Assembly (NCBI RefSeq): GCF_006345805.1
Contig: NW_021832223.1
Location: 124,001 to 188,000, forward strand
Reading direction: 5' to 3'
Origin: Octopus sinensis
Taxonomy: Eukaryota
DNA length: 64,000 nucleotides
Shown: positions 31,761-64,000 of the stretch, piece after piece
Layout: the number at the start of each line of letters is the position of its first letter
Position numbering within the stretch: the stretch's first letter is position 1
Position numbers and translations under genes: made by a program
The notes under the pieces: generated by a model
What the model was told of the DNA's origin: nothing
Seen by the model: only the letters and a program-made list of their open reading frames with translations
Databases searched by the model: none

Positions 31761-31762
31761 TA

Positions 31763-34050: not shown

Positions 34051-34081
34051 TTTTTAAAGATATTTTTCTAAAAATTAATTA

Positions 34082-35891
34082 CAGTGAATCCTCGCAAATT
34101 GGCCATTTTTGGTACATAGAGATTTTATGGCCAATTTGAGAAAATGGCCAATTTGAAAAAAATCAATATTTAAAAAATAAAATAAACACGTTTAAATTTT
34201 ATTAAAATAAAATTCAATCCCTAATTCCTTTTTATTTGCTCTTTTTACATTTTCTTTGTATTTTCTTATTGCAGTAATCAGCGAACATCATTCTCATTTT
34301 CTGCATTACAGTAAAGTTGCCTTTCTATTCTAGTTAATGTCTTTGCAATATCTTTTCTATCGAGTGGATATATGATTTTTGTCTCTTCGTCGCTAATTTC
34401 AGACTCTTGATCCTCTTGTAAACAATTTTCGTTTATATCTTGATCTTCTGTGTTTTCGATATTTAGAAAATCTTCGCTCATTAGAGGATCGAAAATGTCA
34501 GTTCTTTCAATTTCAGTCTCATAATGTTCAATTAATGTATTTTCGTGATTAGATTCATTTAAAATCTTAAAACAATTTTGAATAGTTTCAGTAGATACGT
34601 CATCCCAAGCCATATTAACAAACAAAATTGCATCTTTTAATGTCAATTTTTTGTATGAATTGTATACAGAAATATTTTCAGTCTCCAGCAAATCAGTTAA
34701 TTACTGTAGCTTTCTTCTCATGAAATGAGTCTTGAAGGTTTTTATAATTCTAATATACACTGGTTGTAGTAATCCAGTAGAATTTTAGGAAAAAATAAAA
34801 TCTTAATACAATCCAAGTTTTGAGGAATAGAATGTGCAGGACAGTGGTCTATTAGCAATAAATTTTCTTCTTTTTAATTTTAAGCTGGAGATCAAAGCTA
34901 ATAATCCAATCAATAAAAATAGATCCAGTCATCCAAGCTTTCTGTGAGCTATAATATGAGACAAGACATCCATAGTCAAAATTTTTAAAACATCTAGGCA
35001 TTTTTGGTTTTCCAATCATCACAGTTTCAATTTATGACTTCCGGTCATGTTTGAACAAAGCATAATAGACACACGGTCTTTAAAATTTTTGTTATCCTTG
35101 GAATCGGTTTCTGCATACGCTTTTCGATGGAATAAGCTTGTAGTATAATGCAGTTTCATCCAAATTATAAATTAGATCAGGCTTATACGATTTAGAAATT
35201 TCTTTAAATTCTTCACGAAAAGAATTAATGTCAACTACTTTATCTGTTCGCATCTCTCCATGTATTTTAGCATTCTAAAACCGTGTCTCTTTTTGAATTT
35301 TGCCAGAAATCCATTAGAATTTTTAAAGTTACTAAGTTGTAGCTCTTCGGCAAAATGCGCAGCCTTACACGATATTAAGGAATCATTCAAAAAACCACCT
35401 AAAAATTGGTTTTCAATTAATACCTTTAGACTATTGTATCCATCCATTCGATCAATTTTCTTCAAGCGTAGGAAATTTTGGTTTGTGAGCAGCTTTATAC
35501 GAATTTTGATAGATTTTCGAATCCCGTAAAATAGAGTCTTTATTAAGCAGTAGATTATTGATCGTCTTTCTCGAGATCGTCTTGTGGAATAAATGTGAGA
35601 ATGTCAGCCAGAAGCTGACACGAAACACTGTCATTTTCTTCCTTGTAGTTTATAATTTGTGTTTTTTCAAGAAAAGTGAGCCGAGTATAACGTCCACGAG
35701 AAATTTTATAAGACATGTGATTAAAAAAATAGTTTATTTTCTAATTAAAAAAAATAATTCAAAAATTGTGGCCAATTTGAGAATTGGCCAATTTACTAAG
35801 AAAATTAATTTTTTTCTTAGTAAATTGTGAAAAAATTGGCCAATTTAAAATTGGCCAATTTGCGAGGTGGCCAATTTGCGAGGATTCACTG
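34082..35891 (-). mobile_element. pogo/Tigger DNA transposon, copy B, inverted relative to copy A
   Basis: Near-identical to copy A including the QPVY change, the premature TAA and the 25-nt intron (35399-423); TA TSD; extra ~57-bp hairpin-containing subterminal segment. Confidence 0.93.
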
Positions 35892-41168: not shown

Positions 41169-42336
41169 ATGACACGTTACGTTTCTCGTGGTGCAAAAAA
41201 TAAAACTATCAAAAACTCAAAATCTTCTGTGTCTCAAGAGCTTGAACGCAAAGATGAAATCCGTATCAAAGATGAGGAGGGGTCACACCTCTCAAGCCTC
41301 TTTGAACAATCCAAACTGTACTGAGTCTCTTGTCCTCTCGCTGCAGATAAAAATTATGCGATTGGACGAATAAAGTCCTTTAATATCTAACCAAATCCGA
41401 GACTGCACAGAAGGCCCGAATTACTGCCAGGAAGTCTGGGGACTTTACCCTCGAATTCTCAAATTCTAGTGATAGGGACTCGTTTGTGAATGACTTCGAG
41501 TATAACAAACCATTTGGCCAGGACGGCCATTATATTCTGCGTGCAGTCTGCAACCATCGACCGTAGTCTTGAAGGGAATACCATCTTGGGTCTCCGAGGA
41601 AGACCTGGATCTTTACCTCAAAGAAATTCTCAACCCCGGTTTTACTTTCCAACGTTTCTACAAAAATGGACGGAGTATACCTGTTGGAAAGTTGAGTCTG
41701 AATTCGAGGGCAGAAGCCACTTCGCTTGTAAGGATGGGAATCGAAGTGGGATTTCAAAAAATACGATGCGAATGGTTTAAAAACCCAGCAACAAGATGCT
41801 TTCGCTGCCAACAATTTGGTCACATTGCTAACTTCTGCAAAGAAGTGGAAAGATGTCTTTTCTGTGGTGGTGATCATAATATGAAAATGTGCCCGATTAA
41901 AAGAGAAAAAACTGAGAAAAAATGTATAAACTGCGGTCTGAGTGGGCATTTGGCTTGCTACGGTGGCTGCTCTTCAGCTAAGGCAGCCACTGAACAACTA
42001 AAAAAGCAGCTCAGTGCCAGGGACAGACTGGCCAAAGCAGAACACTCAAAAACTGTATGGTCAAAAGCGGAGGCCGTTGAATCTGTATGGCGAAAACCCA
42101 CAATTTCCCGCTGTTTTGACTCCTCAACGCAAACAGATGTTAGTGAAGACGCAACTTTGCCTCCCAATACACAACACACAGAGCCTCCAACCCGCTTTAA
42201 GAGGAAAGCACCAACTATCGACGTTGAGCTTACCTCTATGATTCGCAAAATAATCGCTATATGCGATGAAAAAGGCCTCGATATCAACAATCTGTTGTCC
42301 CTTTCTCTTGGAAGGGAAAGGATTGATCAGGCGTGA
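41169..42336 (+). CDS. LINE ORF1, gag-like with three zinc knuckles (5' part frameshifted)
   Basis: CFRCQQFGHIANFC, CLFCGGDHNMKMC, CINCGLSGHLACYGGC. Confidence 0.8.
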
Positions 42337-44961
42337 GCCCCTTTCTGTCTATTATCGCTGTGAACGCACGTTCTCTAAAGAGAAGGCGTTCAGAGATTGA
42401 GGATATGTTATCCCATAACCCCGTGGACCTTTTGATCGTAAACGAAACAAAAATCAAAAAACATGATGATTACTACTTGGATGGCTATCGTTCCCTTGAT
42501 ATTAAGTGGAAGCCGGGCTCGATCGCTGGAACAGGCACTTCTATCTACTACAAATCAACTCTAAGGGTGAAAAATCTAAAATTGTGTCCGAGGAATTGTG
42601 TGAATTCCTCACAATCGACGTCCTTCTGGAAAAAGGGTGGGTAACAATCGGAGGGATGTACTCAAAATCCCTTTCCAATTATCATCGCTTATCAAGGACT
42701 TTTTTGCCGATAAACACAATCATTTGTCAATACTCCTCGGGGATCTAAATGCCAAATGCACATCTTTTGGCTGTCTGAGAACCAACAGGGATGGCATCAT
42801 TCTTAAGAAGCTTTCAGAATCTCTCAGTTTCTCGGTCATCACATCAAAAACCCCAAATCATTACTCACCAGGAGGGTGGGACTATTTGGGCGTAGCATTG
42901 GTCTCTATGTCTACTCTTCAATTTATGGAACAACCGTACACCTTAAATGATATTGGAAGTGACCATCTACCAATTTTATACAAACTCAACCTTGGACCTT
43001 TAAAGGGTAAACCAACTTTTATACGATATAACCTCTCGACTATAAACTGGGAACACTACCGAAAATGTTTTACACTTTATCTGAGCAATTTCGCTCCTAA
43101 ACTTGACGAAAATTCTTCATCTGAGGACCTCGAGAAGTCTAGCAATTCCCTTATTGGATACATAAAGTCTTATCTGGAAACATATTCTACAAAAATCGTC
43201 TCAAACAATAGGAAAACTCACATGCCAAACATGAATGTTGAAATCCTACTAAGGAAAAAAAAATGTCTAAGGAACAAACTCCGGCGCTGCGCAGATTTTC
43301 GTGACCGGTCCGTTTTGGAAAGTGAAATCTTCACCATTACGGAAGAAATAAGAAAATCGGCGAAGGTGGCGAAGGATAAAAAATGGAATACTGAGTGCAA
43401 AAAGCTACATAAAGGAAGTCCAAATTTTTGGAAGGTCTACTCGAAATTAACCTCGACGTCTGAGAAAACTATACCTAAACTGCTAAAACAAGATGGATCC
43501 CCTGCATCTCATGAAGAAATCCCGAACATATTTGCTGATAGTCTCAAAAGAATACAAGAAGTCAATCCGGATACAAATCTATCTGATTCAGCTTTGTTTG
43601 ATATGGAAAAAGAGTTGGAAGACAATCTTAGCTCATTACCAATGTGCTCGGAATCTATAACGTGCAAAGACGTGGAAAATGCAGTTAGATACTCCAAAAA
43701 TAACGCTCCGGGAAAGGACAAGATAACCATGCGCATGTTCAAAGAAGCTCCCAAGCAACTTTACGAATATTTGGGATGTCTCTTCTCCCGCAGTGTGAGC
43801 TTGGGATACGTCCCTTCTTCATGGAAACTGACGGAGGTAAGGATGATACGGAAGCCTGGAAAACCTGGTTACTTGGCGACAAGTTATAGGCCTATAAGCC
43901 TAATTCCTACCATCAGTCGAATAATGGAAAGGGTAATGTTTGAACGACTCTCTGAACACGTCGAGAGAAATGGTTATCTCAAAGACGTGCAGTGGGGCTT
44001 TCGGAGGGGTCGTTCCTGTGCTGACTGTCTTTATACACTCAATTCGTCGATTGTAAAGGCTCTGGATTTCAAAGAGTGTCTGACAATTGTGTCTCTAGAC
44101 ATCTCAAAAGCCTTTGATATGGTTTGGCACCTCGGTCTCCTTAGACATCTGGCGAAGTGTCACATAGACAAAGGACTATTCCTATGGCTAAAAGACTTCC
44201 TCCGCGACAGGCGCTCTGTGATAAGCTTTCTGAACTATGACTCGGATGAACTGAAACTTAAAAGAGGCGTCCCTCAAGGATCAGTCCTCAGTCCTCTATT
44301 ATTCAACATTGTGATGAGCAATCTGCCGTCTCCTGTCAACACACGGACGGAAATTTTGATATACGCCGATGATGTTGTAATCCTTGACATTTCATCGAAA
44401 CCTGCCTTATCCGAACAAAGGATTATATCATATATGAATACAGTGGAGCAATGGTGCGATGAAAATATGTTCATTATTGCGCGTGAGAAGTCCGCATTAC
44501 TGAGAATCACAGAAAGCAGAAATTTAATAAATTTACCGTGCCTGATCAAGAACATACCTCGACAAAACTCAATTAAATATCTTGGCTTGTTCATCGATGA
44601 AAAGGGAAACTATCTCGAAAACGCAAAATTAAGTAAAAGGAAAGCAACTAATGCTCTGTTCTGCCTGAGGAAGTTAAATTTGGAGCCTGATACTTTCCTC
44701 TACGTTTTCAATACGGTGATCCTACCGGGACTACTATACGGAAAAGAGGGATGGTACTTCTCTAAAAAGAAGGACACCATCTTAACTAAATTTGAAAAGT
44801 CTCGCAGGCTCGCTTTGAAGCTTGCTTACCACCAAAAAGTTGAAGATCCAATCCCCCTGTGGCTTGAAAGTAAATCCTCCATGGTCGGTGAAACTGTCGA
44901 AAAAGCTATAAGTGGTTATAAATCCAACTCAATTGTCACTGGGACGTACCTGCAGAGGTAG
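42333..44961 (+). CDS. LINE ORF2, APE endonuclease plus reverse transcriptase (frameshift near 42590-42700)
   Basis: VNARSL, NETK, GDLNAK, GSDHLP; YRPISL, QWGFRRGRS, LDISKAFD, GVPQGSVLSP, YADD, IKYLG. Confidence 0.9.
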
Positions 44962-49177: not shown

Positions 49178-50058
49178 GGTACTTTTGTCGAAGTGGTCGC
49201 AGTTTTTTTAGAAGATAATTAAAATTAATTAATTTTTTTAGTGAAAAATAGATTATTTAATTTATAACCCTCTATCAATAATTTAAATGGTTATTAAAAT
49301 TATTTAAAAATTTATTTAACCAATTTAGTCATTTTTAGTACGCGGCATCCAAATTCCAGGACTGTAGAAGGAATTTATGTCTTTTACAATCTGTGCAAAA
49401 CATTCCTTATAGTTCTGTATTTGTTTTCGCCACATAAATTCTGAAAAAATAACTAACTAAAAAAACCTGCGAAATAAGATCCCAGATGATGTCTTACAGC
49501 TCCTCTTTGAGCTTTATTCTTGCATTTTGCACTTCCCCACATTCGTTCTACTGTCTGGGTGTGCACTCCCGTCGTTGGATCCACAAAGAATTTTCTGAAT
49601 ATATTATATTTCCTTACTTATGGTTAACGGTTTCGTGTGTGTAGCCGTTTTCAACCAATTGATCAGTTGAATACCCTAAATGTTAATCAAATAATGCTAA
49701 CCTTTCCAGCAGTCACTATAAATAATGCTTCCCACCTCGACATATCGAATTACTAGACTGAGCAGTGTTTCTCTGCTCCTATCCGCGACTGGTTGCAGAA
49801 AACACTGTTGGTGGCTCGACAAATACCACCGAAGACCCACTGTTTTGGTAAAGTGACCTATAGTGCCAGTTTATATCAATATTAGGTACATGCTCGCCAT
49901 AATATTAAAAAAAATTAGAAAATAAATTAGTAAAAAATTTAATAATATTTTAAATTATTGATAGAGCGACTTAAATAAAATATAATATATTCCACCTCAA
50001 AAATTATTAGATTTTTTAAAAGGCCTAAAAAAACTGCGACCACTTCGACAAAAGTACC
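49178..50058 (-). mobile_element. Merlin (IS1595-like) non-autonomous element
   Basis: ~30-bp perfect TIR ggtacttttgtcgaagtggtcgcagttttt; 8-bp TSD aaatattt; IYSDCWKG|Y..VNHK|..FVDPTTGVHTQ..A|EFMWR after removing 3 micro-introns. Confidence 0.92.
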
Positions 50059-50079
50059 AAATATTTTTGATTTTATTTA

Positions 50080-50081
50080 AA

Positions 50082-50113
<32 letters not shown>

Positions 50114-50290
50114 AAATTTTTATTAATAATGTCAGTTAATAAATTCAGAGAAGAGATTGATTTGAGAAATCAATTGAGGAAGCCCGCTGCCTGTATGGAA
50201 AGCGAGTTCCCTCGGAGTATGGCTTTAAAATTAAATATAAAATTAATTGAAATCTATGGATCTTAGGAAACTGAGGTTATTGAGTCTAGT
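50080..50290 (-). mobile_element. CRE-like 3' stub with poly(A)
   Basis: AILRGNSLSIQAAG then polyT ~50080-50106. Confidence 0.6.
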
Positions 50291-50439
50291 TTTTGATTAT
50301 ATAAAGTAATATTCACATATTTATTAAGTCAAGTATACCCATATTTAGCCGATTCTTGTCATTGGTGATTCTTTTTTTGTAATAATTTAGATTTAAAAGT
50401 TTACAAAATCACCATAATTCTGATGAATTCACTGTACTG

Positions 50440-51300
50440 CTGTTTGCTTTGGACAATGTCTACGATTCACAGTCATAGAGGAAGATTGGGAACATAATGT
50501 GCGTTGACAAGTCTTATCTTTATTCTGAGACAGACATCCTTGCTATTCCAGATTCGATTCAGTTTTATCATCGTACTTCTGTACATGACCATCCGTCTAT
50601 TGGTTTCCGAGACACAACAGTTATCAGACTACTCAGAAAAATACTGTTTTCAGCACATTCTATTTCTTCGTTATTGACGATAAGTCTCACTTTTCCAGAT
50701 AGTGAAGTTGCCATTATTTTGGTTTTTCACATAAAGTAAATATTCATATGCTGTTTGCTCGATTACCCTGAGTTAGAGCCTATTGACCAGATGATAAAAC
50801 TGAATTGACCAGGAGTTCTCAACTTTTTCGAGCTCGCACCTTTAAATATTTTTTCACAAAATCTCGCACCCCAAGAAAATTTTCTATTTAAAATCAATTT
50901 ATTTACAGAAGGAACCAAATTTAGCTAAGGTTACAATATTTAAATTTTTTAACAAGTTCGTTGATCGAAAAAATTTAACAATAAACACAATAAAATTCAA
51001 ATTAACAAAAGTATACAGTAACAAAAGAACGAAAACAAAAATAGACAATTAATGGCTTCTTTGTCTCTGTTTATTATTAATGAGTTTTGTTGCTAATCGA
51101 AATACAAATATCATGTTCAGGATTCATGTGATTTCTGTATTTAGTTTTAATTCTCAAAAGAGAGCTAAATCCCGACTCGCATAAGTATGCCGTTGGAAAT
51201 AAAATAAGTTCATACAGAGCCTTTTGAAATAATTGCGGATACATTTTCATTACTGAACTCCAAAACTCCTCCAGTATTGCCGAAATCACTGAAAATTGTT
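50440..51300 (-). mobile_element. hAT (Buster/Charlie-like) remnants
   Basis: FPTAYLCESGFSSL dimerisation motif; terminal-like caggagttctcaac at ~50810; ESTD-like fragment ~50460. Confidence 0.65.
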
Positions 51301-53446
51301 TTAAAAATTCGATAGCACGACCTCTTAATCAGTTAATAATTTCTACAGTCGTGTCAAGTACATTTTTTAAAAATGGGGAAAGAGTTTTAATAAATAGCAT
51401 GAAGAAAAAAATCGTAATCCTCGGAATTTAATTCTTTAATAGCCCAGCAAAACCAGACTTATTATCAGCATTGCTGGAACACTGTTTGTACAAATAGACC
51501 AGACAATAGTCTGGATATGAATTGAATTTTGGTTTTTGCGTAGATATAATGGGTGTCGCAATTTTCGAATTGTTAGACATGGATTCATAGATATCGTCGG
51601 TCTAAACCTCAGCGTCCACGAATTTTGTACTTTTACTAAAGTTCCATCCTTTCCAGGTATTTTGTACTTTCACTTTTCTTGTTTCTGTGTTGATCTTTTT
51701 TTCTTGTATTTTCATTGCGGAAGACGTATCAAATTTCAGTTTAGTAGACTGATCTGTAGTTTTCCGAGCTCCTTGACAACAGGACATCCTCCGTAGTTGG
51801 CCAAAGAACGAAAACAAAAATAGACAATAATTTGGTAGATAGTTTCCAGTCAGGAGGCATTCCGAACGGGTATATGGGCCTTCACATGAGACACATCACT
51901 TTTTCTTCACAGAGCCGTGCGATATGCCCAAAACGCTGGCAGCGGAAATATTGCGTGTCTGGTTGCTTGTACCAATTACAGAAAATTTCGCGGAACCCAA
52001 TTTTCAACCCCATTCAACCCCATTGTCATAAAAAAATCTTTGACAATGTTTAGAAAATCTATTCTTTTTGTAGTCATTTTTAATTCTTCACAAAACAAAA
52101 CCTCCCTATTGCAATAAGTTGAATACATATGTGAATGTTAAAAAAAGATGAAATGAGTAAAAATTTACTGTGAAAATTCAATTCCAGTCGTGTCAGTGTT
52201 AAAAAAAGATGAAATAATACGATTCAATTAGGAGACGAAGTTTTTTAGTTTTTTTGTCAATTTTGTCAATTTGTCCATTTTTATCAAATTTCGCCTTAAA
52301 TTTCCTCGTACGATTTCTCAGTGCCGTCTCAGCAAACCTTTCTAACTCTGATTGAAATATATTTCCATAATTGTCTGAGAGATACATTAAAGTCAATATT
52401 GTTCAACAGTTCGAGTATTTTTTTACATACTTTATACGGGTATGGTCTGAAACATATAGAGTTTCCACTGCCAAGTTTCTGCCTTGTGTACAAGCTGCAA
52501 GTACTCCAGATTTTCCAAAGCGTCGCTTCAGAATGACACGTGCTATCAGTAATCGGTGATCACTTAAGAAATCATGCTACTGAACGTACGGGAGTCGGTT
52601 GGGTTTAATATATGGACAAGATTTCAATGAAAATCTCTCCTCTGTCCTGTTCACGTTATAACATGTCGAGCTGTGTGTCGAAATGCCGTGTTTTAGAGGA
52701 ACATTCCGAAAGACTCAAAAAATGTGTGAGTGATTCCCCGGATAGATTTCCGATCCCTCGAGCGTAGCTGCCAAGACAAATCGATGCGCCAAACATTTTC
52801 TCACTTTGATATTCTAATCCCCTCTCATAAAAACCATGTAGGAGCTGGGCAGTGATAAGTAAGTTGATTATAAGACGAGTAGAAATCGAAAGTTCCTCTG
52901 CGTTGACAAATACTCTAATTGTGATTAGTGCATATTTATTGGTAATCGATAGGGATGTATTGGAAATTGATCGAGGGTATAATTTTATATAGCATTAGGG
53001 GTTTTAGAATTTCTGATAGGCAACAACTTTTTATAATCGAACCTGTCATATTTGAACAAAATTAAAAAATCACATATTTCTTAATGGAAAAATGACGTCT
53101 TTATCAAAATTCATATTAAATTATTAGTGTCTCACTTTCTCTTGTCTTTGAGAGTTCGTAAGATCACAAATAAAACAAGTTTTAGAATACAATTACTAGC
53201 AATTACTTACTTCTTGATAATTAGTTAGAAATAATGTCCTGTCATAAAAAAATTACTAGCAGTTCAATGAGTAATCCCCGACTGAGGGGTAAAGAGGTGG
53301 TTGATACCCAAAAATGCAGTTACAAATATTTTTCTCATACATTAATACATTTTATTCTAAGATTAAGTTATAACAGATAATTGTCCCATGATAATAACTC
53401 AGAATTCCCAAATAAAGATAAGTATTGATTAATAATGTTAGGAAAT

Positions 53447-54459
53447 CTATTTAGCTAACATTTTGGAAAACTCCAATGGAATAGGGAATATTATAGTCGA
53501 GTTTCTTTCTGCCGCAATGGAGGTCAGAGTCTGAAGATATCTCAGCTGCATAGCCATCGGAGACCCTGAGATTATATTCGAAGCTTCCCGGAGAGCGTCT
53601 GCCGAGTCCCTCTCTCCGTTTGCAGCAATAATCTTAAAATTACCAATAATTAATTATTACCTTGGCACTTGCTTCCCGATTTGCCTCAGCTTCGGCTGCC
53701 ATAGCCCGTTGCATGTCTCTCGGAATCCTCACATCTTTACTAAAGTTTGAATTCAGAAAAAAAAACATTTCCATGGCTTCGACTTTGATTCCCCACCCAT
53801 CGGTGACTTTGTCGAGTTGTTCCTATTATGAGATGTGGTTACTGACTGAAATTGATGCACTGATCGTTTCCTTCTCCTTCAAAATGTCCCCGAGTGTGTA
53901 CATCCCCAAAATATTTCGGAGGATTGCACTTGCTAACAGCTGAGTTGATTTTTTGCAGTTTTCAATCATTATGGACAATATGGGATCAAATATTCGGTAG
54001 AACACCACAGCATCAACAGTCACCGTCACCGAGTCCTTAGTCAGAACCTTTATATTGAGGTTTTTTGGAAAATCACTTCTTGAGGCGGGACATCGAAGGT
54101 GATCGTCCTCATGTCCACAGTCTGTGTCGTGTCAGTACAGGGGATTATGCAAAAAAGGCCTAAACTCAAAAATTATTTTTACCAGGCCCACTCGGACCAC
54201 CTCCAGACACTCGGCCAAGTCGGAAAATAATGACTCGTTGATATTGCATTACAACCTGGATTAGATAAGAAAAAATCAACCTTGACTACAAATATGATGG
54301 AGATTGGGAAAGTCATAATGATGATGATAATTGATAACAGTCGGATAAAGAATCCGCACACCGATTCTGTCAGTGTGCTCTTACTTCCACTTACGACTAG
54401 TTCTTGGGTGTTAAATAACAAGAACTTGGTTTAGTGTCGAATTTGTTTGCACTTTCCAT
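53447..54459 (-). CDS. STOM: Stomatin (SPFH/band 7) family protein, intact
   Basis: [24 protein letters not shown]|[48 protein letters not shown]; seven CDS introns of 23-29 nt plus a probable 23-nt 5'UTR intron. Confidence 0.92.
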
Positions 54460-54714
54460 CTAAACAAATCGTTTATACTTACCTTATATATGTTGTCAAA
54501 GAGATATATAGTAATCAATATTATTTATTATATTTATAAGTACAAACTCAATTTACTTATTTTGTTTAAAAATATACCTCGTCGAGTGAAGGATGAATGC
54601 GAATGGATTCGATAGGCATGTCTAAAATTACGGTGAAAGTAAATATTATTTTGAAAAGTGACGGTAGCTATGCATATTTATGTCAATATTATTGATCTTT
54701 CTGTGAAAAAAATA

Positions 54715-55910
54715 AGTTATATAGCAGCGGCAAAGACGTCCTGTGCGTTACCACGAACGATGGCCAGGCCGATGCGATGGCAGAGTGAGAGACTGATGCT
54801 GCACAGAGTCGATTCATTTGCTTCGGCAAATGAGGTGGGACACAGCAAACCATTGCTTACATACGGGTTCGAGGGATGGTACCCTACTGCTAAGAGGAAT
54901 GGCATTATCTCTAAGTTCGAAAAGACGTGACGATATGCCATCAAATTGGCAAATGGACTCCAGCTGGACCAATCCATCCCTCAAAAGTTGGAAGACGCGA
55001 CGGAAACGATTGGAAGTGTTCTTGAGAGAGCCTTTTCCTCCCGAATCTGGAATTAAACATAAAAAAGAGGGAAAAAACCCAGAAGAAGTATACTTTCTTT
55101 CATTAACTTTCTTTCTCTTTTTCGGCTTTTCCGTTTAAATAAATAAATTCATTCAATAATGATCTCTGACTAAGAGGCCGAGGGCAGCCAAGGCTTGGAC
55201 TTATACACTAGTCTACAAACTGGCGATCTCATTCCCATATACGAGACAGCCCTCCGAACCGCATGCAAGCGAAATGAACTATTTCTGGGGGTCCAAAATG
55301 GGTTGAAAGCGTTGGTGATATCCAGCTTCATCCCGATGAAATCAGTAGTGGTAATTTTTTCCATTGAGAAGCAACCCCTCGTGGCGTGTTTACAGCCGCC
55401 ACCGACTTGGATGGGTGAAAGCTCGGTCCCGATTCTCATCGCAACCCTTCCGGTACCGATTTGGTCGCTGAGCCTTCTAAAGTAGTTCCCAATCGCAATT
55501 TGGGGGACGCATCCGTACGGTTTTTGGAAAAGCGTGTAGGTGGGCAGCGAAAAGAAGATTCCTTTCAAAGAAAGGGAGCTTTCCAACCAGTTTAGTAATT
55601 GAACTCTAGAGACGCAAACCTGATTTCCCGGAGTTCATCTCCTTAATATGCTTTGGCCAAATTCCCCAACTGCTACTTGCTTCGAAAAATCTGATTCCCG
55701 ACAGGATTTCTTCCTCGGTGATGGCCATCGGTGTGGAGTATGAGGGCAGGCGGATGCTTTGACCTTAGCAAAGTTCAAGTCCTGGGAGCACACTTGGCAA
55801 CAGAGTAGCCAAAGAATCAAACACGCACGGCAGCTCTCATATCTCCTTCGAGGAGCTTCAGATTCACTTGCTTGATTATCCTGGCGTCTTGTCCAATGCC
55901 ATTTTTGCAA
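54715..55910 (-). mobile_element. Degenerate CRE-like non-LTR remnant
   Basis: MKLDITNAFN, LSPIQVG..CKHA, RIGLAIVRGNAQ. Confidence 0.6.
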
Positions 55911-56229
55911 GAGTCAGCCTTTCTCTGGAACAGCTCAGGTTTCTTTATAGTTCGATTTTCTTCGGAAAAATGAAAAACTATTAATTATTTATTTACAATT
56001 AACCTTGATTTTTTAAGTTAAATAGTATTTATTCTATATAGTTTTCAAATATCTTTATATATAACACTACTTATTGCATAGAGTCAGGGAACGTAAGCTT
56101 GGCGCTCGTCCCGTAGCCACTACCAACCAAACCGTTGACAGGTTGGTTGGCAAGGGGGAAAAATTGGTTCTGTTTGTTGCTGATGTGAAATCAGCATCCA
56201 ATCGTCTCCACGAGAAGGTGAACCACATG

Positions 56230-57716
56230 ACGATTCTGAGTCCTCCCACTTGCTGAATCTCAACATGGCTTTCGTTCTTTGCATTCCACTTCCACCCATC
56301 TTTCAAAACTGACACAATTCATTGCGGATGGGTTTAACAATCATAAGCCACCTCAAAGAACAATTATTGCATCCATCGACATTGAAAAGGCATTTGACAG
56401 AACGTCAAGACACGTTCTGTGTAGGAAAATAACCGATACGGAATTCCCCCACCAAATAAAGTCATGGCTACTCTCTTTTCTCTCTGGGCGTCTTGGTCGC
56501 ACCACAATCATGTCTTCTTACTCACGCTACAAATACTTGCCTAACGGAGTTCCCCAAGGCTCGGTCCTTTCACTGCCTTATTTAACTTACATCTGTCAAA
56601 TATCCCGACGAACAATAATACTCTACTTCTCTCCTACGCTGATGACTTAATTTTTGCCTCCCGCCACCAAAACATAATCACCGCTTCTGGATTTCTGCAG
56701 GAACACATGAACACTCTTTCGTCCTGGCTGAAATGCAATCTTCTTCAACCTTCTCCTTCCAAATCATCTGTTACGCTATTCACAACTGACCGCCGTCAGT
56801 TCACTTAAAGCCTAAACTATTCCTAGACAACACTCCACTCCCAGTTGAAAAATCCCCCAAAATCTTGGGTCTGATATTTGATTGCTGTTTGTCCTTCTCG
56901 AAACATGTTTCATATATCTGTGGAAAATCCCAGAAAAAACTCAATGTGCTCCGAGCTATTGCGGGGACTTCATTTGGGCAGGATAAGGAAAGTCTAACAA
57001 CTGTATACAAGCAGTTTATTAGAACAACTATGAACTACGCCATCCCTGCTTGGGGTTCCTGCTTATCTAATACAAACCTTGAAAAACTTCAGAGAACTCA
57101 AAACTCAGCATTACGAATTATTACCGGCTGTCTAAAAACGACACCTACCGACCACCTACATTGGGAATCGAAAATCCTTCCAATCAGTGACCATTTTGAA
57201 ATGCTCGGGCTGCAATTTCTTGACAAATGCCGAACCCTAAATCACCCTGGCTACTTCCTCTGGCACTCCACTAACAACAGGAGAATAGTTCCGACCTCGC
57301 GGACAAAGTCCGCAAGCTTATACGATCCCCTCCGGACATTAACCAGAAGGGGATTCACGACCTGGTGGCTACGAGGGCAATCAGATGTCTTGGAATAAAC
57401 AAGCTTCTGGGACGCCTTCCGCCGCCAATTAATAAGATCGAATCCTCCCTCTCAAGAGAAGCCCGAGTGAACTTGGCTCGTCTCCGCTGTGGCCACCATA
57501 CTGGCCTACACGATTATCGCATAAAATCGGTCTTGGTGAAATAACCCCTTCCTATTCCTCAACGACCTTTTCTCCTGTCCAGGCCCGCCTTCTACTTCCT
57601 CGGAACACCGGATCACGATCGGGGATCTTTGGGAGCGTCCGACATTGGCCCTAACGTTCTTGTTAGCCACCGGCTTCCTTCAATTGAAGGGGCCGGGGGT
57701 AAATAAATAAATAAAT
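56230..57716 (+). mobile_element. 5'-truncated LINE (RT plus C-terminus), (TAAA)n tail
   Basis: IDIEKAFD, GVPQGSVLS, YADD, PKILGLIFD, LQRTQNSALRIITG. Confidence 0.85.
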
Positions 57717-57799
57717 ACTTATTGCATTCAATTCAATAAAAGACAAAAAATATTTCAAGTAATTAATTTGTGGAGAATACATATTTAAATATCAATCAT

Positions 57800-60700
57800 T
57801 TATGACGATTCTGAGTCACCCACGTCTCTCACATCAGAAGCATTCGAAGAATCGGATGCTAAAACCATGCCACCTTTAAACTAAAATAAAACAGGATACC
57901 GTCTTGCGAAGATTCACTCTCAAATATCAAAGCATTAGAAAAATGTTCTTCAAAAGACGATTCTCTGGGTGGACAAACATCTGAAATAGAAATGACTGAA
58001 AAATCAAATAAAACGGGATTACCTTCTTGTTCGCACTCAGAATTAGGAATAGAAGGACAATCAACTGCCAATTGATCAAGGTGGTCTATCGTGAGTTGCC
58101 TCTTCATTCACGAAGGTCTCGCTGGATCCAGAAAATGTTAATTCATGATTTGAAACACCATAACAATCTAAAACTGACATTTTACGAATTTTACCAGGAA
58201 AACCAATTAAACCAGTGGTTCTCAAACTGGGGTACGCGTACCCCTAGGGGTACGCGAAATTCTGTAGGGGGTACGCGAAAATTTTTTGAAAATCTATTTA
58301 ATTTTCGTTTCAACATAAAAAAGTTATTAATTCTAATTATAATAAAAATCATAATTCTGTAGGGGGTACGCGAAAATTTTTTGAAAATCTATTTAATTTT
58401 CGTTTCAACATAAAAAAGTTATTAATTCTAATTATAATAAAAATCATAATTAAATTAAATAATTAATAATAAAATAAATCTCCACGCTACTAGTTTTTCT
58501 TATGAGTTTACCTGTTAACAAGATTCGAAAATACAACGATAGTTATCTCAACTATGGATTTTATTTTGTGATTAAAAACGGTGTGCCACATCCGCAGTGT
58601 ATTATTTGCCAAAAGATTCTTTGCCCTGAATCCATGAAACCTTCATTACTTTCTCGGCATCAAGTTTCTAATCATTTCGAAACTATCGGAAAACCAAATG
58701 ACTTTTTTAAGAACAAAAAGATAATATTCGGAAAATAGACGATTCTTTCAATTTTGACATTAATTTTTTACTATCAAAACTCTCTTACATGATTTCATAT
58801 CGGATCGCAAAAGCCAAAAAACCACATACAATTGCCGAGAATCTTATTATACCGTGCATTAAGGACATGTTTGAATGTTTCCCTGGCAATAAATTGGAGC
58901 ATATTGTTCGAAAAATTCCATGTTCAAATGATACCGTCAATAGAAGAATACGAGATCTATCCGAAACATAAAAGAACAAGTTATTTTCTGGTTAATTATT
59001 ATCAGGTCATTACTGAATAAAAAAGTGCTGCCTTTAAAAAATTTTCAATTCAATTGGATGAATCAACAGATGTAGCAAATTGCTCTCAGTTACTCGTTTA
59101 TGTGCGATATATTTATATGGAAAATATTAAGGAAGAATTTTTGTTCAACTATTCCTTACCTTTAAACACAAAAGGTTCTGATATTTTCGATGCAGTTAAT
59201 GTTTTTTTTGAAACAGAAGGTACATTTTTGATTTTTTTACTTATGATAGGCCTATTGTGGCAAAATCTTAGTGCATGCACCACAGATGGAGCACCAGCTA
59301 TGCTTGGATGTAACTCTGGTTTCCGAGGTAGAGTACAATCTGTCAATCCAAATGTAAAACATCTTCACTGTATGTTGCATCGTTATGTTCTTGCTGTGAA
59401 GACAATGCCTCTTGAACTTAAAAATGTTCTTGACGATGTTATTAAAATTGTCAATCATATCAAAAAAAGTCCTTTAAATTCGCGAATTTTTTATTCAATT
59501 TGTGAAGAATTTGGTTCAGATGAGAAGGTTTTACTATATCACACAGAAGTTCGATGGTTATCCAAAGGAAATGTTCTTTCCAGAGTGCACAGTTTGAAGA
59601 ATGAAATTTATGAATATTTTCTTCGCGAAAATAAAAATTTATATTTATCAAAGTTATCAAATATGTATTGGGGTGTAATGCTATCTTATTTAACGGACAT
59701 TTTTTCGCGAATTAATGCTTTGAATTTATCGGTACAAACTAAGGGAGTTACCATTGTTGACTTTTTAGAAAAAAAAAGGTTTTTTACGAAATAATGCAAT
59801 ATTGTAGGTCTTTTCGTATGAAGCTCCAACTGTGGATAGATAATACAACAAATTCTAATTTTACTATTTTGATAAGTTGAATGAAAACATTTTCCATCTA
59901 AAATTAAATGAAATAGAAAATTTAAAACATCAAATAACTTCCCATTTACTTGGATTGAAGAATGAAATTGAAAAATATATACCTGAAATTAATGAAGTAG
60001 ATCTTAAGTTTTTTGTCAATCCTTTTTCCGTAAAAGTTAATGTTTTGCCTTCAAATATTCAAGAAGAAGTTATTGAATTAATAAATTCTTACGAGTCAAA
60101 AATCTTATTTGAATCTGCACCATTAATTGAATTTTGGTGTAAAATGACATCAAAATATCACAATATTGGATTTTATATAATCGATTTTTTGCTTTTGTTT
60201 CCGACTACATATCTCTGCGAACAAGGATTTTCATCGTTGTTTAATTTAAAATCAGTTCATCGTGCGAGGCTGAATGTTGTTCATGATATTCGGGGTGTCT
60301 TTCGTCAAAGGATCCAGAAATCGATAGATTAGTGATTGATAAACAACACCATCCATCTCATTAATTAAATATTTTTTTTCCTTAATTTTTTAAAAATCGA
60401 TAAGGGGTACGCGAAAATTATTTAGATGGCAAGGGGTACGCAAGAAAAAAAGTTTGAGAACCACTGAATTAAACTCTTCAGACAGTCCGCAAACTCTGAT
60501 GGAATAGAGGCTCGTTCAAGAGTTCAAGATACGAAAAGTGTCGGTTAAGTGATGTATTTTCTATATCCCTAGGGACAGTTACTCATCGGTTTATAGTGTC
60601 TGAATATTTGCCGACGATAAATAAACTCCTCGACGGTCCCACAACTAATTAGCCTATAAACCACCACTGGGCGGGTTTGACCGACTCTATGAGCCCTTCC

Positions 60701-62194
60701 AATGGCTTAACTATCACTAACAGGATTCCAACTCGGATCGTCTTAAAATTAAACCCAAAATTGTTGTACATATCAAAACTCTGTCCGCAAAGGTCAAAGT
60801 GAGTCCAACTCCTCCAACCATCGTCGTCAAAAGCAAACAATTTGGGGATTTTACTGGGTTTTGAAAGGCTTCCACAATTTCTCCTCTCCTTTCCATTTGG
60901 ACATTTCCGTCCATTCGAAGTAATCGGTGACCCTGAAATGTTTTAGAAAACTCCAACTTGGCTAAGAAGAATCTTCTCAAGAATGTCAAGAACCTTCAGA
61001 GATCGAGAGAAAACGAGTGTCCGATGTCCATCTTTGCCATGTTGAGCAATCGGACAAACCAAAAATATACAGCAATTCCACATCAGAATCCCCATTGGAC
61101 TCTTTAAGTAATGTTTCCACCACAGAAATATGAAGAAGGTCAGGATGGTCACAAAGTTTTTTTCAAATTGACAATCTCAATAAGTGGGGACCTCGTTGAA
61201 GTCATTGACTGGGATTACATCAAATAATACCTCTCTGACTTGTTTGGAGGACAATAATTGTTGATAGATTGATATTTGATGATCATTTAAAAAAGTCCAA
61301 CATACCAAATCCAGTTTTGGTGGGATTTCAGACAGACCAGTCGATTTAAGTTCAATTTGGTCTTTAGTTCTCCGAAGAATGAGAGGATCGACCATTTCTT
61401 TAAGTTTTCTAAGTCGAGTCTCCCCCAATCCTTGGACGACTGCACTCGTTCCTCTCTCATTTGCCTAAAATGGAAGAAAATAACACACTCTGCTGATTTT
61501 TGTAGCGAAAGTTTCCTTAAAGTGCTTCATCGTCCCCAATTGATGGGTTCCACTCGTCACAAAATCCACAAGTCCCCACAATTCCTAGAAATAGCCTTAA
61601 ATAAAGACCATAAGATTGTTCTGCAAGTGTCCCAGTGAGGGCTAATCGCCAATGACTCTTCAAAGAATTGAGGATTTTAGCCGAATTGGTTTGATTTCGG
61701 AGAACATGTGCCTCATCCACTACGATCAAGTCCTAAGATGAGAAAAACAGTACAAAGATGTATTTCTCAAGTTGTCTGCAGAGTTGAGGACCGTGGTGTA
61801 GGTCGTCAAAAGGACCCCCCGACGATTCAAAAAACGACGGAATATTCTAGCTTTTCTCTTCCGTAGAATTTATAATATGGAAACGCAGTTTTCCTGGAAA
61901 TAATGTTAAGAAATAACAGACCATTTAGAAATTTCATTTTCCCAATCTTGAGGAGATTGGTAGGAACAATTATTAAAATGAGAAGAGAAGTGTCTTCGTC
62001 ATATAGAGACTGGATGTATGCGATAGCTTGAAGAGTTTTTTCCAAGTCTGGACTAGTTAATATGCAAAATACCCCATCTCATCACCCAGGATTGCCCTTT
62101 TTGATTTTTGTAAGGTCTTTTGGATCCATAAAACACCGTCTCGTTAGTAATCAAATAGTTTTTTGATTATAGAATCACAACAACGCATCTCCAT
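57800..62194 (-). pseudogene. ERCC6L: ERCC6L/PICH-like SNF2 helicase, disrupted (stops, frameshifts, hAT insertion)
   Basis: KLFDY*RDG, GDEMG|[62 protein letters not shown]; probable continuation GVSNHEL beyond the hAT. Confidence 0.75.
58213..60466 (+). mobile_element. hAT (Buster/ZBED5-like) transposon, complete ends
   Basis: TIR cagtggttctcaaact; 8-bp TSD aattaaac; BED finger PQCIIC, QLDESTD, TDGAPAM, HCMLHR, TEVRWLS, FPTTYLCEQGFS; three micro-introns; several frameshifts. Confidence 0.95.
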
Positions 62195-62265
62195 ATTATA
62201 ATATGATCCCGCGTAGTTTAATTATTATATAATGTGATACAATAAAAGGTACATATGTAGTAGTT

Positions 62266-63066
62266 GGCGGCCACTTTTTAGCGAATTTTAAAAAACTATA
62301 TTTTTTTTAGTTAAAAAAAATATATAATTAAAAATAATACAATATAAAAATAATAAAATCCCACGCTACTTTAATTTAAATGAGAAGTGAGGTCAATCTA
62401 TTCAATCTACCCACAAATATGTCAGAAGCTATCAATTTCATGCAATCCAGAGGAATCATCCCAAAAAAAGTGTGTCGCAACGGACACCAAATGACTTTAA
62501 ACATTGGCAGCTCTCCGGCTTGGAATTGCTACAGAAGGGGCTGTCGAAGTAAATCGAGTCTAAAAACTGGTATTTATATCATTAAAACTCAACAGGAACG
62601 TGGTTCAGGAACCAAAGTACCATTCGAAGATATAATCCGGTTTGTCTACCTGTGGGCAAAAAATATATCTTCTATGGAGATATGCATGGAAAATCTTGGT
62701 TGGGCTTCACATACAACCGTGGACTGGTCAATGTACATGCGTGAAATTTGCATGCTATCATTGACATCTCGTCAGAGATCCAAAATAGGTGTGCGTAAAT
62801 TTATAATATAATAGGCGGTGAAGGAATGATTGTGGAAATTGACGAAAGTCATTTTTCAAAAAGGAAATACAACAGAGGCAGAATGTTGCCTGAGCAATGG
62901 GTTTTCGGCGGAATCTGCAGAGAAACGAACCAATAGAAAGAATTTGAAACAATCATGGAGTGCATTGCCTTACATTGTCCCCCAGAATCAAAACTAAAAT
63001 AAAAATAATAATTAATAATTTTGTATAAAAATAATTATTTTTTTATAGTAATATTATGTCACCGCC
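62266..63066 (+). mobile_element. Merlin remnant (second family)
   Basis: CRNGH..WNC..C, KIG|[24 protein letters not shown]; GGCGG termini, no clear TSD. Confidence 0.78.
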
Positions 63067-63129
63067 ACAACTGTTACTCCGCCAGATGTGTTACACCAAC
63101 ATCAAATTGTCAAGTTGGAAAAAACTTAA

Positions 63130-64000
63130 AACATGAATCCTTTGGTATATTTCTATGAAATCAAAGAAAACTTATAAATTTTTAAAAATATTGATGTTTT
63201 TTTAAATTACAAATACACGTTAAAAATGCGTTTAGTGCAAGTACAAAGGAAGACTTAGAATTACTTAAGGAACTTAAGAGCAATCCTGAGCTCGTATTCG
63301 TCAGCAGGACGCTTTCGCGGATGCAAGATCAAGACTACTGAATTAGCAAATAAATTTGATTTTTTGGATGGAGCTCATATATCACTAAAGATGGACTTAA
63401 ATTAAGATTTTTCTGCAGCGATGAAGCTGAACTTAAGATAAATATATTGAAGTTTGCATAATAAATGTTTTATTCAATTGGCTGAACATAATTTGAATCA
63501 TTTTGGTCGAGACCGGTTGTTTTCAAAATTGGCGCGCTTATACCACGGAATATCACGTGCAGAGATCAATCGTGTCATAAACGATGTATTCCTTGCCAGG
63601 TTTTAAGTTTTTTTTATTAATTTTTTAGTCAAAAAAATCATTGGCTACTAACCCCCCAGTTACGCCGATCATTGCAAGGCGGAGTCGCGATCGGTATATC
63701 GCCGATTTAGTGGACCTAAGGAGATATTCAGATATTAATGATTCTTATAACTGGGTACTTTTGGCTATATAAAGATTAGATTCTTGTAATTGTCGATTCT
63801 TTTTCGAATTCGCGATAGTTGAGTTATCTTTTACCAAAAGAGCTCATGAAATTGCTTCGTTATTTCAGAACATCTTTTATTATATTGGGCCACCATTGAT
63901 CTTGCATACAGACAATGGTAAAGAATTTTGCAATGACCATGTCGCCCGTTTATGTGAAAAGTACAAAATTAAACAGTCCGTGGACGACCAAGGCTCCTTG
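63130..64000 (+). mobile_element. Ginger/KRBA2-like integrase-type transposase; runs off the window
   Basis: H..LNHFGRDR..CIPCQ zinc motif, RYIADLVD, W|ILVIVDSFS, PLILHTDNGKEF; introns 63600-628 and 63755-779. Confidence 0.7.

What the first reader, a model, noticed from the sequence alone, without database searches (positions are those of the whole stretch)
49178..63779. DNA transposases of four groups carry host-type 23-30-nt introns; retroelements have none
Removing tiny GT-AG introns restores canonical transposase motifs or frame: Merlin 49441-466, 49595-617, 49676-701, 62570-595, 62789-814; hAT 58980-59005, 59220-249, 59779-807; Ginger-like 63600-628, 63755-779; outside this span pogo 30416-440 / 35399-423 and Tigger 12388-416. 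All 13 match the host intron size class, and several sit in elements with intact TIRs and TSDs. Tigger- and Buster-type transposases are usually single ORFs. Inference: this genome rapidly intronises resident genes, either through an active micro-intron gain mechanism or through selection to escape silencing of intronless transcripts.
Basis: partly seen in the sequence, partly recalled or inferred. Interest (0 to 1): 0.8.

Follow-up and report, generated by a model that had tools for sequence, protein, structure and literature searches.

The report
Micro-introns inside dicyemid DNA transposon genes
Cut-and-paste transposons in this tiny-intron animal genome (almost certainly a dicyemid parasite of octopus) carry real 23-31-base introns that their relatives in other animals lack, a neat but not unprecedented record of intron gain.

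Summary
All 13 listed segments are GT-AG, 23-30 nt and AT-rich. They represent 12 events, because the two pogo copies are one duplicated element. Removing them gives gapless alignments to intronless relatives. Polished sister copies on contigs of the Octopus sinensis assembly give intact ORFs only after removal: hAT 593 aa with three introns, pogo 508 aa with one. Host genes carry the same intron class, for example a 25-nt intron splitting the DEMG|LGKT motif of an SNF2 gene. The closest Merlin and hAT relatives are single-exon genes, and the closest pogo relatives are full-length proteins on short contigs. The introns are therefore insertions gained in these transposon lineages, mostly at AG|G sites.

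The pogo and Ginger introns predate the splitting of their subfamilies, so "rapid" gain is not shown. A second hAT family has two different introns, which points to recurrent gain. Retroelements lacking introns is the expected result of copying spliced RNA and is not evidence about silencing. No introner-like source was found, and the flank-duplication signal was weak.

Caveat: the window has about 0.5% indel errors, so single-copy frame arguments are noisy. The finding is a new member of a known kind; intron acquisition by Tc1-like elements has already been described.

The parts
49178..50058 (-). Merlin1: internally deleted Merlin element that keeps the C-terminal half of the transposase. TIRs at 49178-49202 and 50034-50058; 8-bp TSD AAATATTT at 49170-49177 and 50059-50066.
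   Evidence: perfect 25-bp TIRs, 0 expected by chance; DDE_Tnp_IS1595, E=1e-17.
49676..49701 (-). Merlin1 intron 1. 26 nt, phase 1. Joins SDCWK|GYSTDQL.
   Evidence: Read-through hits a stop; alignment to single-exon relatives is gapless.
49595..49617 (-). Merlin1 intron 2. 23 nt, phase 2. Joins TVNHK|KFFVDP.
49441..49466 (-). Merlin1 intron 3. 26 nt, phase 1. Joins GSYFA|EFMWRKQ.
62249..62935 (+). Merlin2: 5' fragment of a second Merlin family, unrelated to Merlin1 at the nucleotide level. Possible TIR starting GGTAC at 62249; N-terminal coding region 62419-62935.
62570..62595 (+). Merlin2 intron 1. 26 nt, phase 1. Removal recreates the conserved LKT|GTWF motif. A nearby 1-2-nt indel in this copy still breaks the frame.
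62789..62814 (+). Merlin2 intron 2. 26 nt, phase 1. Joins RSKIG|[11 protein letters not shown].
58213..60466 (+). hAT-A element of the Buster/ZBED5-like group. TIR CAGTGGTTCTCAAAC at both ends; 8-bp TSD AATTAAAC at 58205-58212 and 60467-60474; coding region 58502-60364. The window copy carries several single-base deletions and one in-frame TAA (59018).
   Evidence: The sister copy on L001 (10078-12253) is 99.3% identical and intact after splicing.
58980..59005 (+). hAT-A intron 1. 26 nt, phase 0. Joins ENIKEQ|VITEIK in the L001 copy.
59220..59249 (+). hAT-A intron 2. 30 nt in the window, 29 nt in L001; phase 1. Joins FFETEG|LLWQNL.
   Evidence: The NCBI model P0014 uses this acceptor.
59779..59807 (+). 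hAT-A intron 3. 29 nt, phase 2. Joins FLEK(K/T)R|SFRMKLQLW.
63487..64000 (+). Ginger-like stand-alone integrase-type transposase (H2C2 zinc finger plus rve core). It runs off the window end.
   Evidence: The nearest relatives are 420-480-aa H2C2+rve proteins without RT.
63600..63628 (+). Ginger-like intron 1. 29 nt, phase 0. Joins CIPCQ|SKKSLATNPP.
   Evidence: A diverged copy on L001 has an intron at the same site.
63755..63779 (+). Ginger-like intron 2. 25 nt, phase 0. Joins DSYNW|ILVIVDSFS.
30038..31762 (+). pogo copy A. The left TIR is truncated, and the copy shares a nonsense mutation with copy B.
30416..30440 (+). pogo intron. 25 nt, phase 1. Lies inside the HTH_Tnp_Tc5 domain and joins TIESK|GGFLNDS.
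   Evidence: The intact copy on L008 needs its removal to give the 508-aa ORF.
34081..35794 (-). pogo copy B, an inverted duplicate of copy A. The same intron lies at 35399-35423.
11650..12712 (+). Degraded Tigger-like pogo-family transposase (partial HTH_Tnp_Tc5 plus DDE_1).
12388..12416 (+). Tigger-like intron. 29 nt, phase 1. Lies in the unconserved C-terminal tail and is supported by frame and stop codons only.
62048..62072 (-). Host-gene intron used as a yardstick. 25 nt, GT-AG. Splits the DEMG|LGKT Walker A motif of an SNF2-family helicase gene.
41506..44961 (+). Non-LTR retrotransposon used as a contrast. ORF1 has a CCHC knuckle; ORF2 is an uninterrupted 785-aa open frame (42604-44958) with endonuclease and full RVT_1 matches; no intron.

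Best explanation
The window comes from a very repeat-rich animal genome with ultra-short introns. By inference this is a dicyemid mesozoan living in octopus kidney, because near-identical transposon copies lie on contigs of the Octopus sinensis assembly whose housekeeping genes also have 23-28-nt introns.

Its cut-and-paste DNA transposons (two Merlin families, a Buster-like hAT, pogo/Tigger, a Ginger-like integrase element) have transposase genes interrupted by ordinary GT-AG spliceosomal micro-introns. These belong to the same size and composition class as the host's own introns. The host spliceosome must remove them before a transposase can be made (inferred; no RNA data).

The introns are insertions that arose within these transposon lineages, mostly at AG|G proto-splice sites. 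They are absent from the closest relatives elsewhere.

They persist and spread because these elements move as DNA, so the intron travels with each copy. Retroelements cannot keep sense-strand introns, because their template RNA is spliced before reverse transcription.

A spliceosome that accepts about 25 nt of AT-rich sequence with minimal signals makes it easy for a small insertion to be tolerated as an intron. That would explain recurrent gain across superfamilies (inferred).
For: Intact ORFs appear only after intron removal:
- hAT, 593 aa, on L001.
- pogo, 508 aa, on L008, in an element with 24-bp TIRs and a TA TSD.

Alignments to intronless relatives are gapless at the hAT and Merlin junctions. 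By eye, the pogo and Ginger junctions also match relatives without gaps.

The fetched hAT and Merlin relatives are single-exon genes.

Pfam domains become continuous across the junctions.

The pogo intron keeps its site, its 25-nt length and GT-AG in a subfamily only 73% identical at the DNA level, while its sequence has diverged.

Both Ginger intron sites are shared with a diverged copy.

hAT-B has two different introns of 25 and 31 nt.

Host introns of the same class:
- SNF2 gene, 62048-62072.
- GlyRS on L009; its spliced product aligns to human GlyRS at E=1e-132.

The introns are 10-28% GC.

In intronless relatives the homologous sites are often AG|G.

The chance of 12 GT..AG insertions is about 3e-23.

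hAT copies at different loci have different flanks; the window copy has its own TSD. The copies differ by 6 substitutions in 2.1 kb, so the element moved with its introns.

The dicyemid host matches published values: GC 36.7%, 49% repeats, median intron 27 nt (PMC6736024, PMC6543705, PMC13644364).
Against: - No transcript evidence: splicing is inferred from sequence only.
- The window copies are damaged by indels, so four junctions need a neighbouring frameshift to be explained away.
- The Tigger intron lies in an unconserved region.
- Only two or three relatives per family had their loci inspected. Closer, unsampled relatives (for example in cephalopods or other spiralians) could carry the same introns.
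- The Ginger relatives come from a library with no gene structures.
- Host identity is inferred, not shown by a marker gene.
Confidence: 0.8

Rival explanations
1. One reading: the genome actively and rapidly intronises resident genes. The proposed cause is either a dedicated micro-intron gain mechanism or selection for introns that let transposon transcripts escape silencing of intronless RNAs.
For: - At least 14 distinct intron sites in five or more transposon lineages within about 130 kb of sequence.
- Sites are family-specific: hAT-A and hAT-B differ.
- Intron density in the Merlin sequences, taking the two families together (about 5 per 0.9 kb of coding sequence), approaches the host figure of 6.2 per 1.16 kb (PMC6736024).
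- Intron-dependent escape from silencing exists in human cells (PMC8770142).
Against: - The pogo and Ginger introns are older than the splitting of their subfamilies.
- The time available since the nearest outside relatives (47-58% identity) is long.
- Introns share no sequence with one another and have no extra copies, so there is no introner-like source.
- The flank-duplication signal is weak (p about 0.04 on the 5' side, not significant on the 3' side).
- Host introns are reported as conservative in position (Ogino 2010 via PMC6543705).
- A Helitron-type helicase stretch of more than 200 aa shows no micro-intron.
- The contrast with retroelements is mechanistically trivial.
Confidence: 0.25
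2. The introns are ancestral to these transposon families. They were inherited from earlier hosts and merely shrank to the dicyemid size class, as host-gene introns did.
For: - Host introns in dicyemids are shortened ancestral introns (PMC6543705).
- DNA transposons in many hosts do carry introns (general knowledge: P element, Ac, Tc3, Drosophila pogo).
Against: - All fetched hAT and Merlin relatives are single-exon genes. The best pogo relatives are full-length contiguous proteins (two on 1.8-2.2-kb contigs), though their loci were not inspected.
- Most of the 120 best Merlin hits are about 290-aa proteins on contigs of about 1-1.3 kb, which leaves no room for introns.
- hAT-A and hAT-B share no intron site.
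Confidence: 0.1
3. The segments are not introns. They would be random small insertions in dead copies, or assembly artefacts.
For: - The window has about 0.5% indel errors.
- Several window copies are degraded.
- About 21 GT..AG intervals of 23-30 nt occur per kb per strand by chance.
Against: - The same segments occur in independently assembled, otherwise intact copies, whose ORFs are complete only after removal.
- Every homology-defined insertion is bounded by GT..AG (probability about 3e-23).
- Site and length are conserved across diverged subfamilies.
Confidence: 0.03
4. The segments are removed at the DNA level, as internal eliminated sequences in a soma/germline system, rather than spliced from RNA.
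For: The segments are short, AT-rich and precisely bounded. That superficially resembles ciliate IESs.
Against: - The boundaries are GT..AG, not TA..TA.
- Identical features are seen in host housekeeping-gene introns, which published transcriptome-based annotation treats as spliceosomal introns (PMC6736024).
Confidence: 0.02

Closest known systems
Spliceosomal introns in DNA-transposon transposase genes (P element, Ac, Tc3, Drosophila pogo, fungal Restless; general knowledge)
   Same: The intron sits inside the transposase gene, conforms to the host's intron size and signals, and travels with the element because transposition is DNA-based. Expression depends on host splicing.
   Different: Here the introns are the shortest class known in animals (23-31 nt). 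They also occur in groups whose sampled relatives are single ORFs: Buster-like hAT, Merlin and Tigger-like pogo.
TLEWI Tc1-like elements of pteriomorph bivalves, which acquired 2-5 spliceosomal introns (bioRxiv 10.1101/656579)
   Same: A normally intronless transposase lineage gained GT-AG introns within one animal clade, and copies share an identical exon-intron structure.
   Different: TLEWI lack TIRs, are low-copy and are argued to be domesticated. The elements here keep TIRs and TSDs, exist as near-identical copies at different loci, and span several superfamilies.
Exon/intron evolution of CACTA transposases in plants (PMC4158355)
   Same: Intron positions in a DNA-transposon gene are compared across lineages to infer gain and loss.
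   Different: In CACTA an ancestral multi-exon gene mostly lost introns, with one putative gain. Here the inferred ancestral state is intronless and the changes are gains.
Dicyemid host micro-introns (Ogino 2010; PMC6543705; PMC6736024; PMC13644364)
   Same: Same size class (median 27 nt), GT-AG boundaries, AT-rich composition, reduced splice signals.
   Different: Host introns are described as shortened ancestral introns at conserved positions. The transposon introns sit at positions that are not ancestral.
Introners: transposons that create introns in host genes (PMC9860276, PMC12130899)
   Same: Both link transposons with intron gain.
   Different: The relation is reversed: here the transposon gene receives introns. 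The introns are unique sequences with no other copies, so this is not an introner family.
HUSH silencing of intronless mobile elements (PMC8770142)
   Same: It offers a possible selective reason for a transposon to carry introns.
   Different: It has been shown in human cells, chiefly against retroelements. Nothing here tests whether dicyemids have such a system.

Membership tests
U2-type spliceosomal (GT-AG) intron | GT at the 5' end and AG at the 3' end on the coding strand | tested here: met
   All 13 segments; also the extra introns on L007 and L008.
U2-type spliceosomal (GT-AG) intron | Removal restores a continuous reading frame and protein homology | tested here: met
   593-aa hAT and 508-aa pogo ORFs; gapless junctions; continuous Pfam matches. 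The Tigger case rests on frame only.
U2-type spliceosomal (GT-AG) intron | Actually excised from RNA | not testable with these tools
   No transcript data were reachable. NCBI model boundaries coincide with two acceptors (P0014; P0242 starts at L007 733, immediately after the intron). This is only suggestive.
U2-type spliceosomal (GT-AG) intron | Same size and composition class as the host's introns | tested here: met
   Transposon introns are 23-31 nt. Host examples are 25 nt in the SNF2 gene and 23-28 nt in GlyRS. The literature median is 27 nt (PMC6543705).
Merlin superfamily | IS1595/ISXO2-like DDE transposase | tested here: met
   PF12762, E=1e-17; 120 relatives at 40-51% identity.
Merlin superfamily | TIRs and an 8-9-bp TSD | tested here: met
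   Merlin1 has 25-bp perfect TIRs and an AAATATTT TSD. The Merlin2 ends are uncertain.
hAT superfamily (Buster/ZBED5-like) | 8-bp TSD, short TIRs, and homology to Buster/ZBED5-type transposases | tested here: met
   AATTAAAC TSD and 15-bp TIR. 58% identity to ZBED5-like proteins carrying DUF4371 and FAM200 domains.
hAT superfamily (Buster/ZBED5-like) | C-terminal hAT dimerisation domain (PF05699) | tested here: inconclusive
   My Pfam scan of the 593-aa protein returned no hAT-family model. Several relatives carry PF05699, and the C-terminus aligns with theirs by eye.
pogo/Tigger (Tc1/mariner superfamily) | HTH_Tnp_Tc5 plus DDE_1 domains, TIRs and a TA TSD | tested here: met
   Pfam E=1e-10 and 6.5e-38. 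On L008 the TIR is CAGTGAATCCTCGCAAATTGGCCA with TA on both sides.
Ginger DNA transposons | Stand-alone H2C2 plus DDE integrase without RT or RNase H | tested here: inconclusive
   The nearest relatives are 420-480-aa H2C2+rve proteins, and only 3 of 135 hits are long polyproteins. No RT or RNase H was found in the 460 nt upstream. The element is cut by the window end.
Ginger DNA transposons | TIRs (TGTNR termini) and a 4-5-bp TSD | not testable with these tools
   The 3' end lies outside the window and the 5' end was not defined.
Introner-like elements | Many introns sharing one sequence family | tested here: not met
   No similarity among introns beyond low complexity, and no other copies within about 130 kb.
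Ciliate-type internal eliminated sequences | TA...TA boundaries and DNA-level excision | tested here: not met
   Boundaries are GT..AG. DNA-level excision could not be tested.

The most novel reading that the evidence does not exclude
Dicyemids have an ongoing insertional micro-intron gain process. Their spliceosome needs so little signal that small AT-rich insertions at AG|G sites become introns. Transposon families, which can be dated by copy divergence, record it. Alternatively or in addition, intron-bearing transposase genes are favoured because intronless transcripts are silenced. Either would make the mechanism and rate of intron gain in an animal directly measurable.
Probability: 0.25. 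Interest if true: 0.75.

Novelty: new member of a known kind. Interest (0 to 1): 0.45.

Why it matters
Clear, datable cases of spliceosomal intron gain in animals are rare. This small sample shows at least 14 insertional gains in transposase genes whose sampled relatives are single ORFs, in the animal lineage with nearly the shortest introns known. If the pattern holds genome-wide, dicyemid transposon families would give a natural time series for asking how new introns arise and how little sequence a spliceosome needs.

There are two practical points. The Octopus sinensis assembly contains large dicyemid contigs annotated as octopus genes. Standard gene predictors with a minimum intron length of about 30 nt mis-model them.

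The contrast with retroelements is textbook biology and adds nothing new.

Tried and rejected
- **Chimeric query.** I joined the Merlin and Ginger sequences into one query to save a database search. All 120 listed hits were Merlin, so Ginger gained nothing.
- **Spliced Ginger peptide.** I used the exact 74-aa window ORF instead.
- **Dynamic-programming spliced-ORF finder**. It recovered real host introns, but it also chose spurious 18-20-nt or 46-nt 'introns' and was derailed by indel errors in the window. I used only junctions backed by homology.
- **Pfam on the spliced hAT protein** returned no hAT-family model, although relatives carry precomputed DUF4371 and FAM200 domains. I relied on the direct homology search.
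- **Tandem-duplication or staggered-repair origin.** The intron 5' ends resemble the start of the downstream exon only weakly (60 vs 50±5 matches, p about 0.04). The 3' side was not significant. I do not claim this origin.
- **Introner-like origin.** Rejected: no intron-to-intron similarity and no extra copies.
- **Ciliate code or IES reading.** I considered this at the start because of the intron size. I dropped it: the host genes are metazoan (Snail-type zinc finger, stomatin, SNF2, GlyRS), the code is standard, and the boundaries are GT-AG.
- **One Merlin gene with five introns.** Rejected: Merlin1 and Merlin2 share no nucleotide similarity.
- **LTR-retroelement reading of the 'Ginger' integrase.** Made unlikely by the architecture of its nearest relatives.

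Full report
**What the window is.** The window is 35% GC and packed with repeats: roughly 95-bp satellite arrays, LINE fragments, Helitron-like helicase pieces and DNA transposons.
- It reads in the standard code and holds metazoan-type host genes: a Snail/Scratch-like zinc finger, a stomatin and an SNF2 helicase.
- A second copy of the hAT element, 99.3% identical, lies on contig VCDQ01006703.1 of the Octopus sinensis assembly. pogo copies lie on three further contigs of that assembly.
- One of those contigs (854 kb) carries a glycyl-tRNA synthetase gene with many 23-28-nt GT-AG introns. After splicing, its product aligns to human GlyRS over 557 residues at E=1e-132.
- Octopus genes do not look like this (general knowledge). 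Dicyemids, which parasitise the octopus kidney, have 36.7% GC, 49% repeats and a median intron of 27 nt (PMC6736024, PMC6543705, PMC13644364).
- I therefore infer that the host is a dicyemid. This is an inference, not a marker-gene identification.

**Quality of the window.** The two inverted pogo copies in the window (30038-31762 and 35794-34081) differ by no substitutions but by about 19 one- to three-base indels.
- The window hAT differs from its sister copy mainly by single-base gaps, located exactly where its reading frame breaks.
- The window therefore carries roughly 0.5% indel errors. Frame arguments made on a single window copy are unreliable, so I leaned on the polished sister copies and on protein homology.

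**Checking the observation.** All 13 segments are GT..AG on the coding strand and 23-30 nt long.
- *hAT.*
  - On the L001 copy, removing three segments of 26, 29 and 29 nt turns frames 0, 2, 1, 0 into one intact 593-aa ORF.
  - Each junction aligns without a gap to the closest relatives...NIKEQ|VITEIK......FFETEG|LLWQNL......FLEKTR|SFRMKL....
- *pogo.* On the L008 copy, which has 24-bp TIRs and a TA target duplication, removing one 25-nt segment gives an intact 508-aa ORF. The HTH_Tnp_Tc5 match then runs across the junction.
- *Merlin1.* Three removals give one 153-aa frame that matches the IS1595-type DDE domain as a single stretch.
- *Merlin, all junctions.* All five Merlin junctions are gapless against nine relatives.
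  - The first Merlin2 junction is recognisable only by the recreated G-x-W-F motif, because a nearby indel still breaks the frame.
- *Ginger-like.* The two junctions recreate C-x-x-C-Q|... and ...W|ILVIVD and lengthen the rve match.
- *Tigger.* This intron is supported only by the frame change and by stops in both frames.
- *Count.* The two pogo introns are one event, so there are 12 events, not 13.
- *Chance.* It is negligible. Only 0.27% of 23-30-nt intervals are GT..AG, which gives about 3e-23 for twelve homology-defined insertions.
- *Host yardstick.* A 25-nt intron at 62048-62072 splits DEMG|LGKT in the SNF2 gene.
- *TIRs and TSDs.* Merlin1 and hAT have intact TIRs and TSDs.

**Are the positions ancestral?** The evidence says no.
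- The nearest hAT relatives are a Palaemon protein at 58% identity and an ENA contig protein. Both are single uninterrupted ORFs spanning the junction sites.
- Three Merlin relatives (a scorpion, Strongyloides ratti and an ENA eukaryote) are single exons. Most of the 120 best Merlin hits are about 290-aa proteins on contigs of about 1-1.3 kb.
- The best outside pogo relatives are contiguous full-length proteins; two sit on 1.8-2.2-kb contigs. One is from the microsporidian Dictyocoela, at 47% identity. Their loci were not fetched.
- In intronless relatives the homologous sites are often already AG|G. The introns are thus pure insertions at proto-splice-like sites.
- A second hAT family on L008 (32-40% identical in protein) has two introns of 25 and 31 nt at other sites and none of the three hAT-A introns. 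That argues for repeated, family-specific gain.

**How old are they?** They are not demonstrably recent.
- A pogo subfamily only 72.8% identical at the DNA level (L007) has a 25-nt GT-AG intron at exactly the same codon. Its sequence bears little resemblance to the other.
- A degenerate Ginger-like copy on L001 has shortened remnants at both sites.
- The intron-bearing elements are or were recently mobile. The hAT copies at different loci have different flanks and differ by 6 substitutions in 2.1 kb; the window copy has its own TSD.

**Source of the introns.** I found none.
- The introns share nothing beyond AT-richness and have no other copies in about 130 kb.
- There is only a weak resemblance between the intron 5' ends and the start of the following exon.

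**Retroelements.** The LINE ORF2 is an uninterrupted 785-aa open frame with a full reverse-transcriptase match. Other retroelement fragments were not examined at this level.
- Absence of introns is what the life cycle dictates. A sense-strand intron is spliced from the RNA that is reverse-transcribed (established knowledge), so the contrast says nothing about silencing or intronisation.
- A Helitron-type helicase stretch of more than 200 residues also shows no micro-intron. Introns are therefore not universal among DNA-based elements.

**Classification of the 'Ginger-like' gene.** Its nearest relatives are 420-480-aa proteins with an H2C2 finger and an rve core at residues about 70-235 and no reverse transcriptase. 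Only 3 of 135 hits are long polyproteins. It is a stand-alone integrase-type transposase rather than part of an LTR element. Its ends could not be examined.

**Comparison with what is known.**
- DNA transposons with host-type introns are familiar: P, Ac, Tc3, Drosophila pogo.
- Acquisition of introns by a normally intronless Tc1-like lineage has been described in bivalves (bioRxiv 10.1101/656579).
- Intron gain and loss has been traced in CACTA transposases (PMC4158355).
- The dicyemid genome papers I read do not discuss transposon introns.
- The new content here is the host (the micro-intron class), the number of superfamilies affected, and the fact that the elements are still bona fide transposons.

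**Verdict.** The finding is a new member of a known kind and of moderate interest. It is chiefly a lead to a tractable system for studying intron gain, plus a warning about dicyemid contamination and mis-annotation in an octopus assembly.

Noticed in passing
L001, L007, L008, L009 (contigs VCDQ01006703.1, VCDQ01010602.1, VCDQ01010770.1, VCDQ01000570.1 of GCA_006345805.1): The Octopus sinensis assembly holds contigs up to 854 kb that have dicyemid-type micro-introns and the same transposons as this window. Their products are annotated as octopus proteins ('ZBED8-like', 'tigger transposable element-derived protein 6-like', 'glycine--tRNA ligase, mitochondrial 1-like'). The NCBI models skip or merge exons because they cannot model introns shorter than about 30 nt. 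One model fuses a pogo fragment to GlyRS.
   Followed up: partly
window 30038-31762 vs 34081-35794: The two inverted pogo copies differ by 0 substitutions and about 19 small indels. This signature of long-read assembly error means frameshifts across the window should not be read as pseudogenisation.
   Followed up: yes
window 58205-60474 and 60467-62200 (minus strand): The hAT element is inserted, with an AATTAAAC duplication, at the 3' side of an SNF2-family helicase gene. That gene also has an in-frame TAA at the conserved Q of its 'YQ' motif near 62150. It may be a pseudogene, or the stop may be another sequence error.
   Followed up: no
window 498-2004, 6877-10089, 38652-41071, 13244-13968: Large tandem arrays of a roughly 95-bp satellite. 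The copies at 0.5-10 kb are about 96% alike, and the array at 38.6-41 kb is about 79% identical to them in the opposite orientation. The first two arrays are part of a 3.1-kb duplicated block together with Helitron-like PIF1 helicase sequence (498-3647 and 8582-11741).
   Followed up: no
P0264 (representative library, no source): A 170-aa Ginger-like protein from the library has a 9-residue in-frame insert (VFISSIKSQ, i.e. GT...CAG) at exactly the site of Ginger intron 2. It looks like an unspliced 27-nt micro-intron read through by a gene caller in another tiny-intron genome.
   Followed up: no
P0243, P0248 (Dictyocoela muelleri): The closest non-dicyemid relative of the pogo element (47-48% identity) comes from a microsporidian parasite of amphipods. 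This may hint at transposon exchange among parasites or their hosts.
   Followed up: no
L008 12771-14429; L001 19494-20541 (minus); L007 9002-10513; window 51086-51454 (minus): Further, diverged hAT-family copies. The L008 copy (hAT-B) has its own two micro-introns at 13081-13105 and 13362-13392 and a small deletion in the TDGA motif. The others were not examined.
   Followed up: partly
L001 10100-11030 (model P0014); L008 (model P0241): NCBI models use a donor inside the hAT TIR region spliced to the intron-2 acceptor, and a 102-nt in-frame GT-AG 'intron' inside the pogo DDE region. I could not tell whether these are alternative splicing or prediction artefacts.
   Followed up: no
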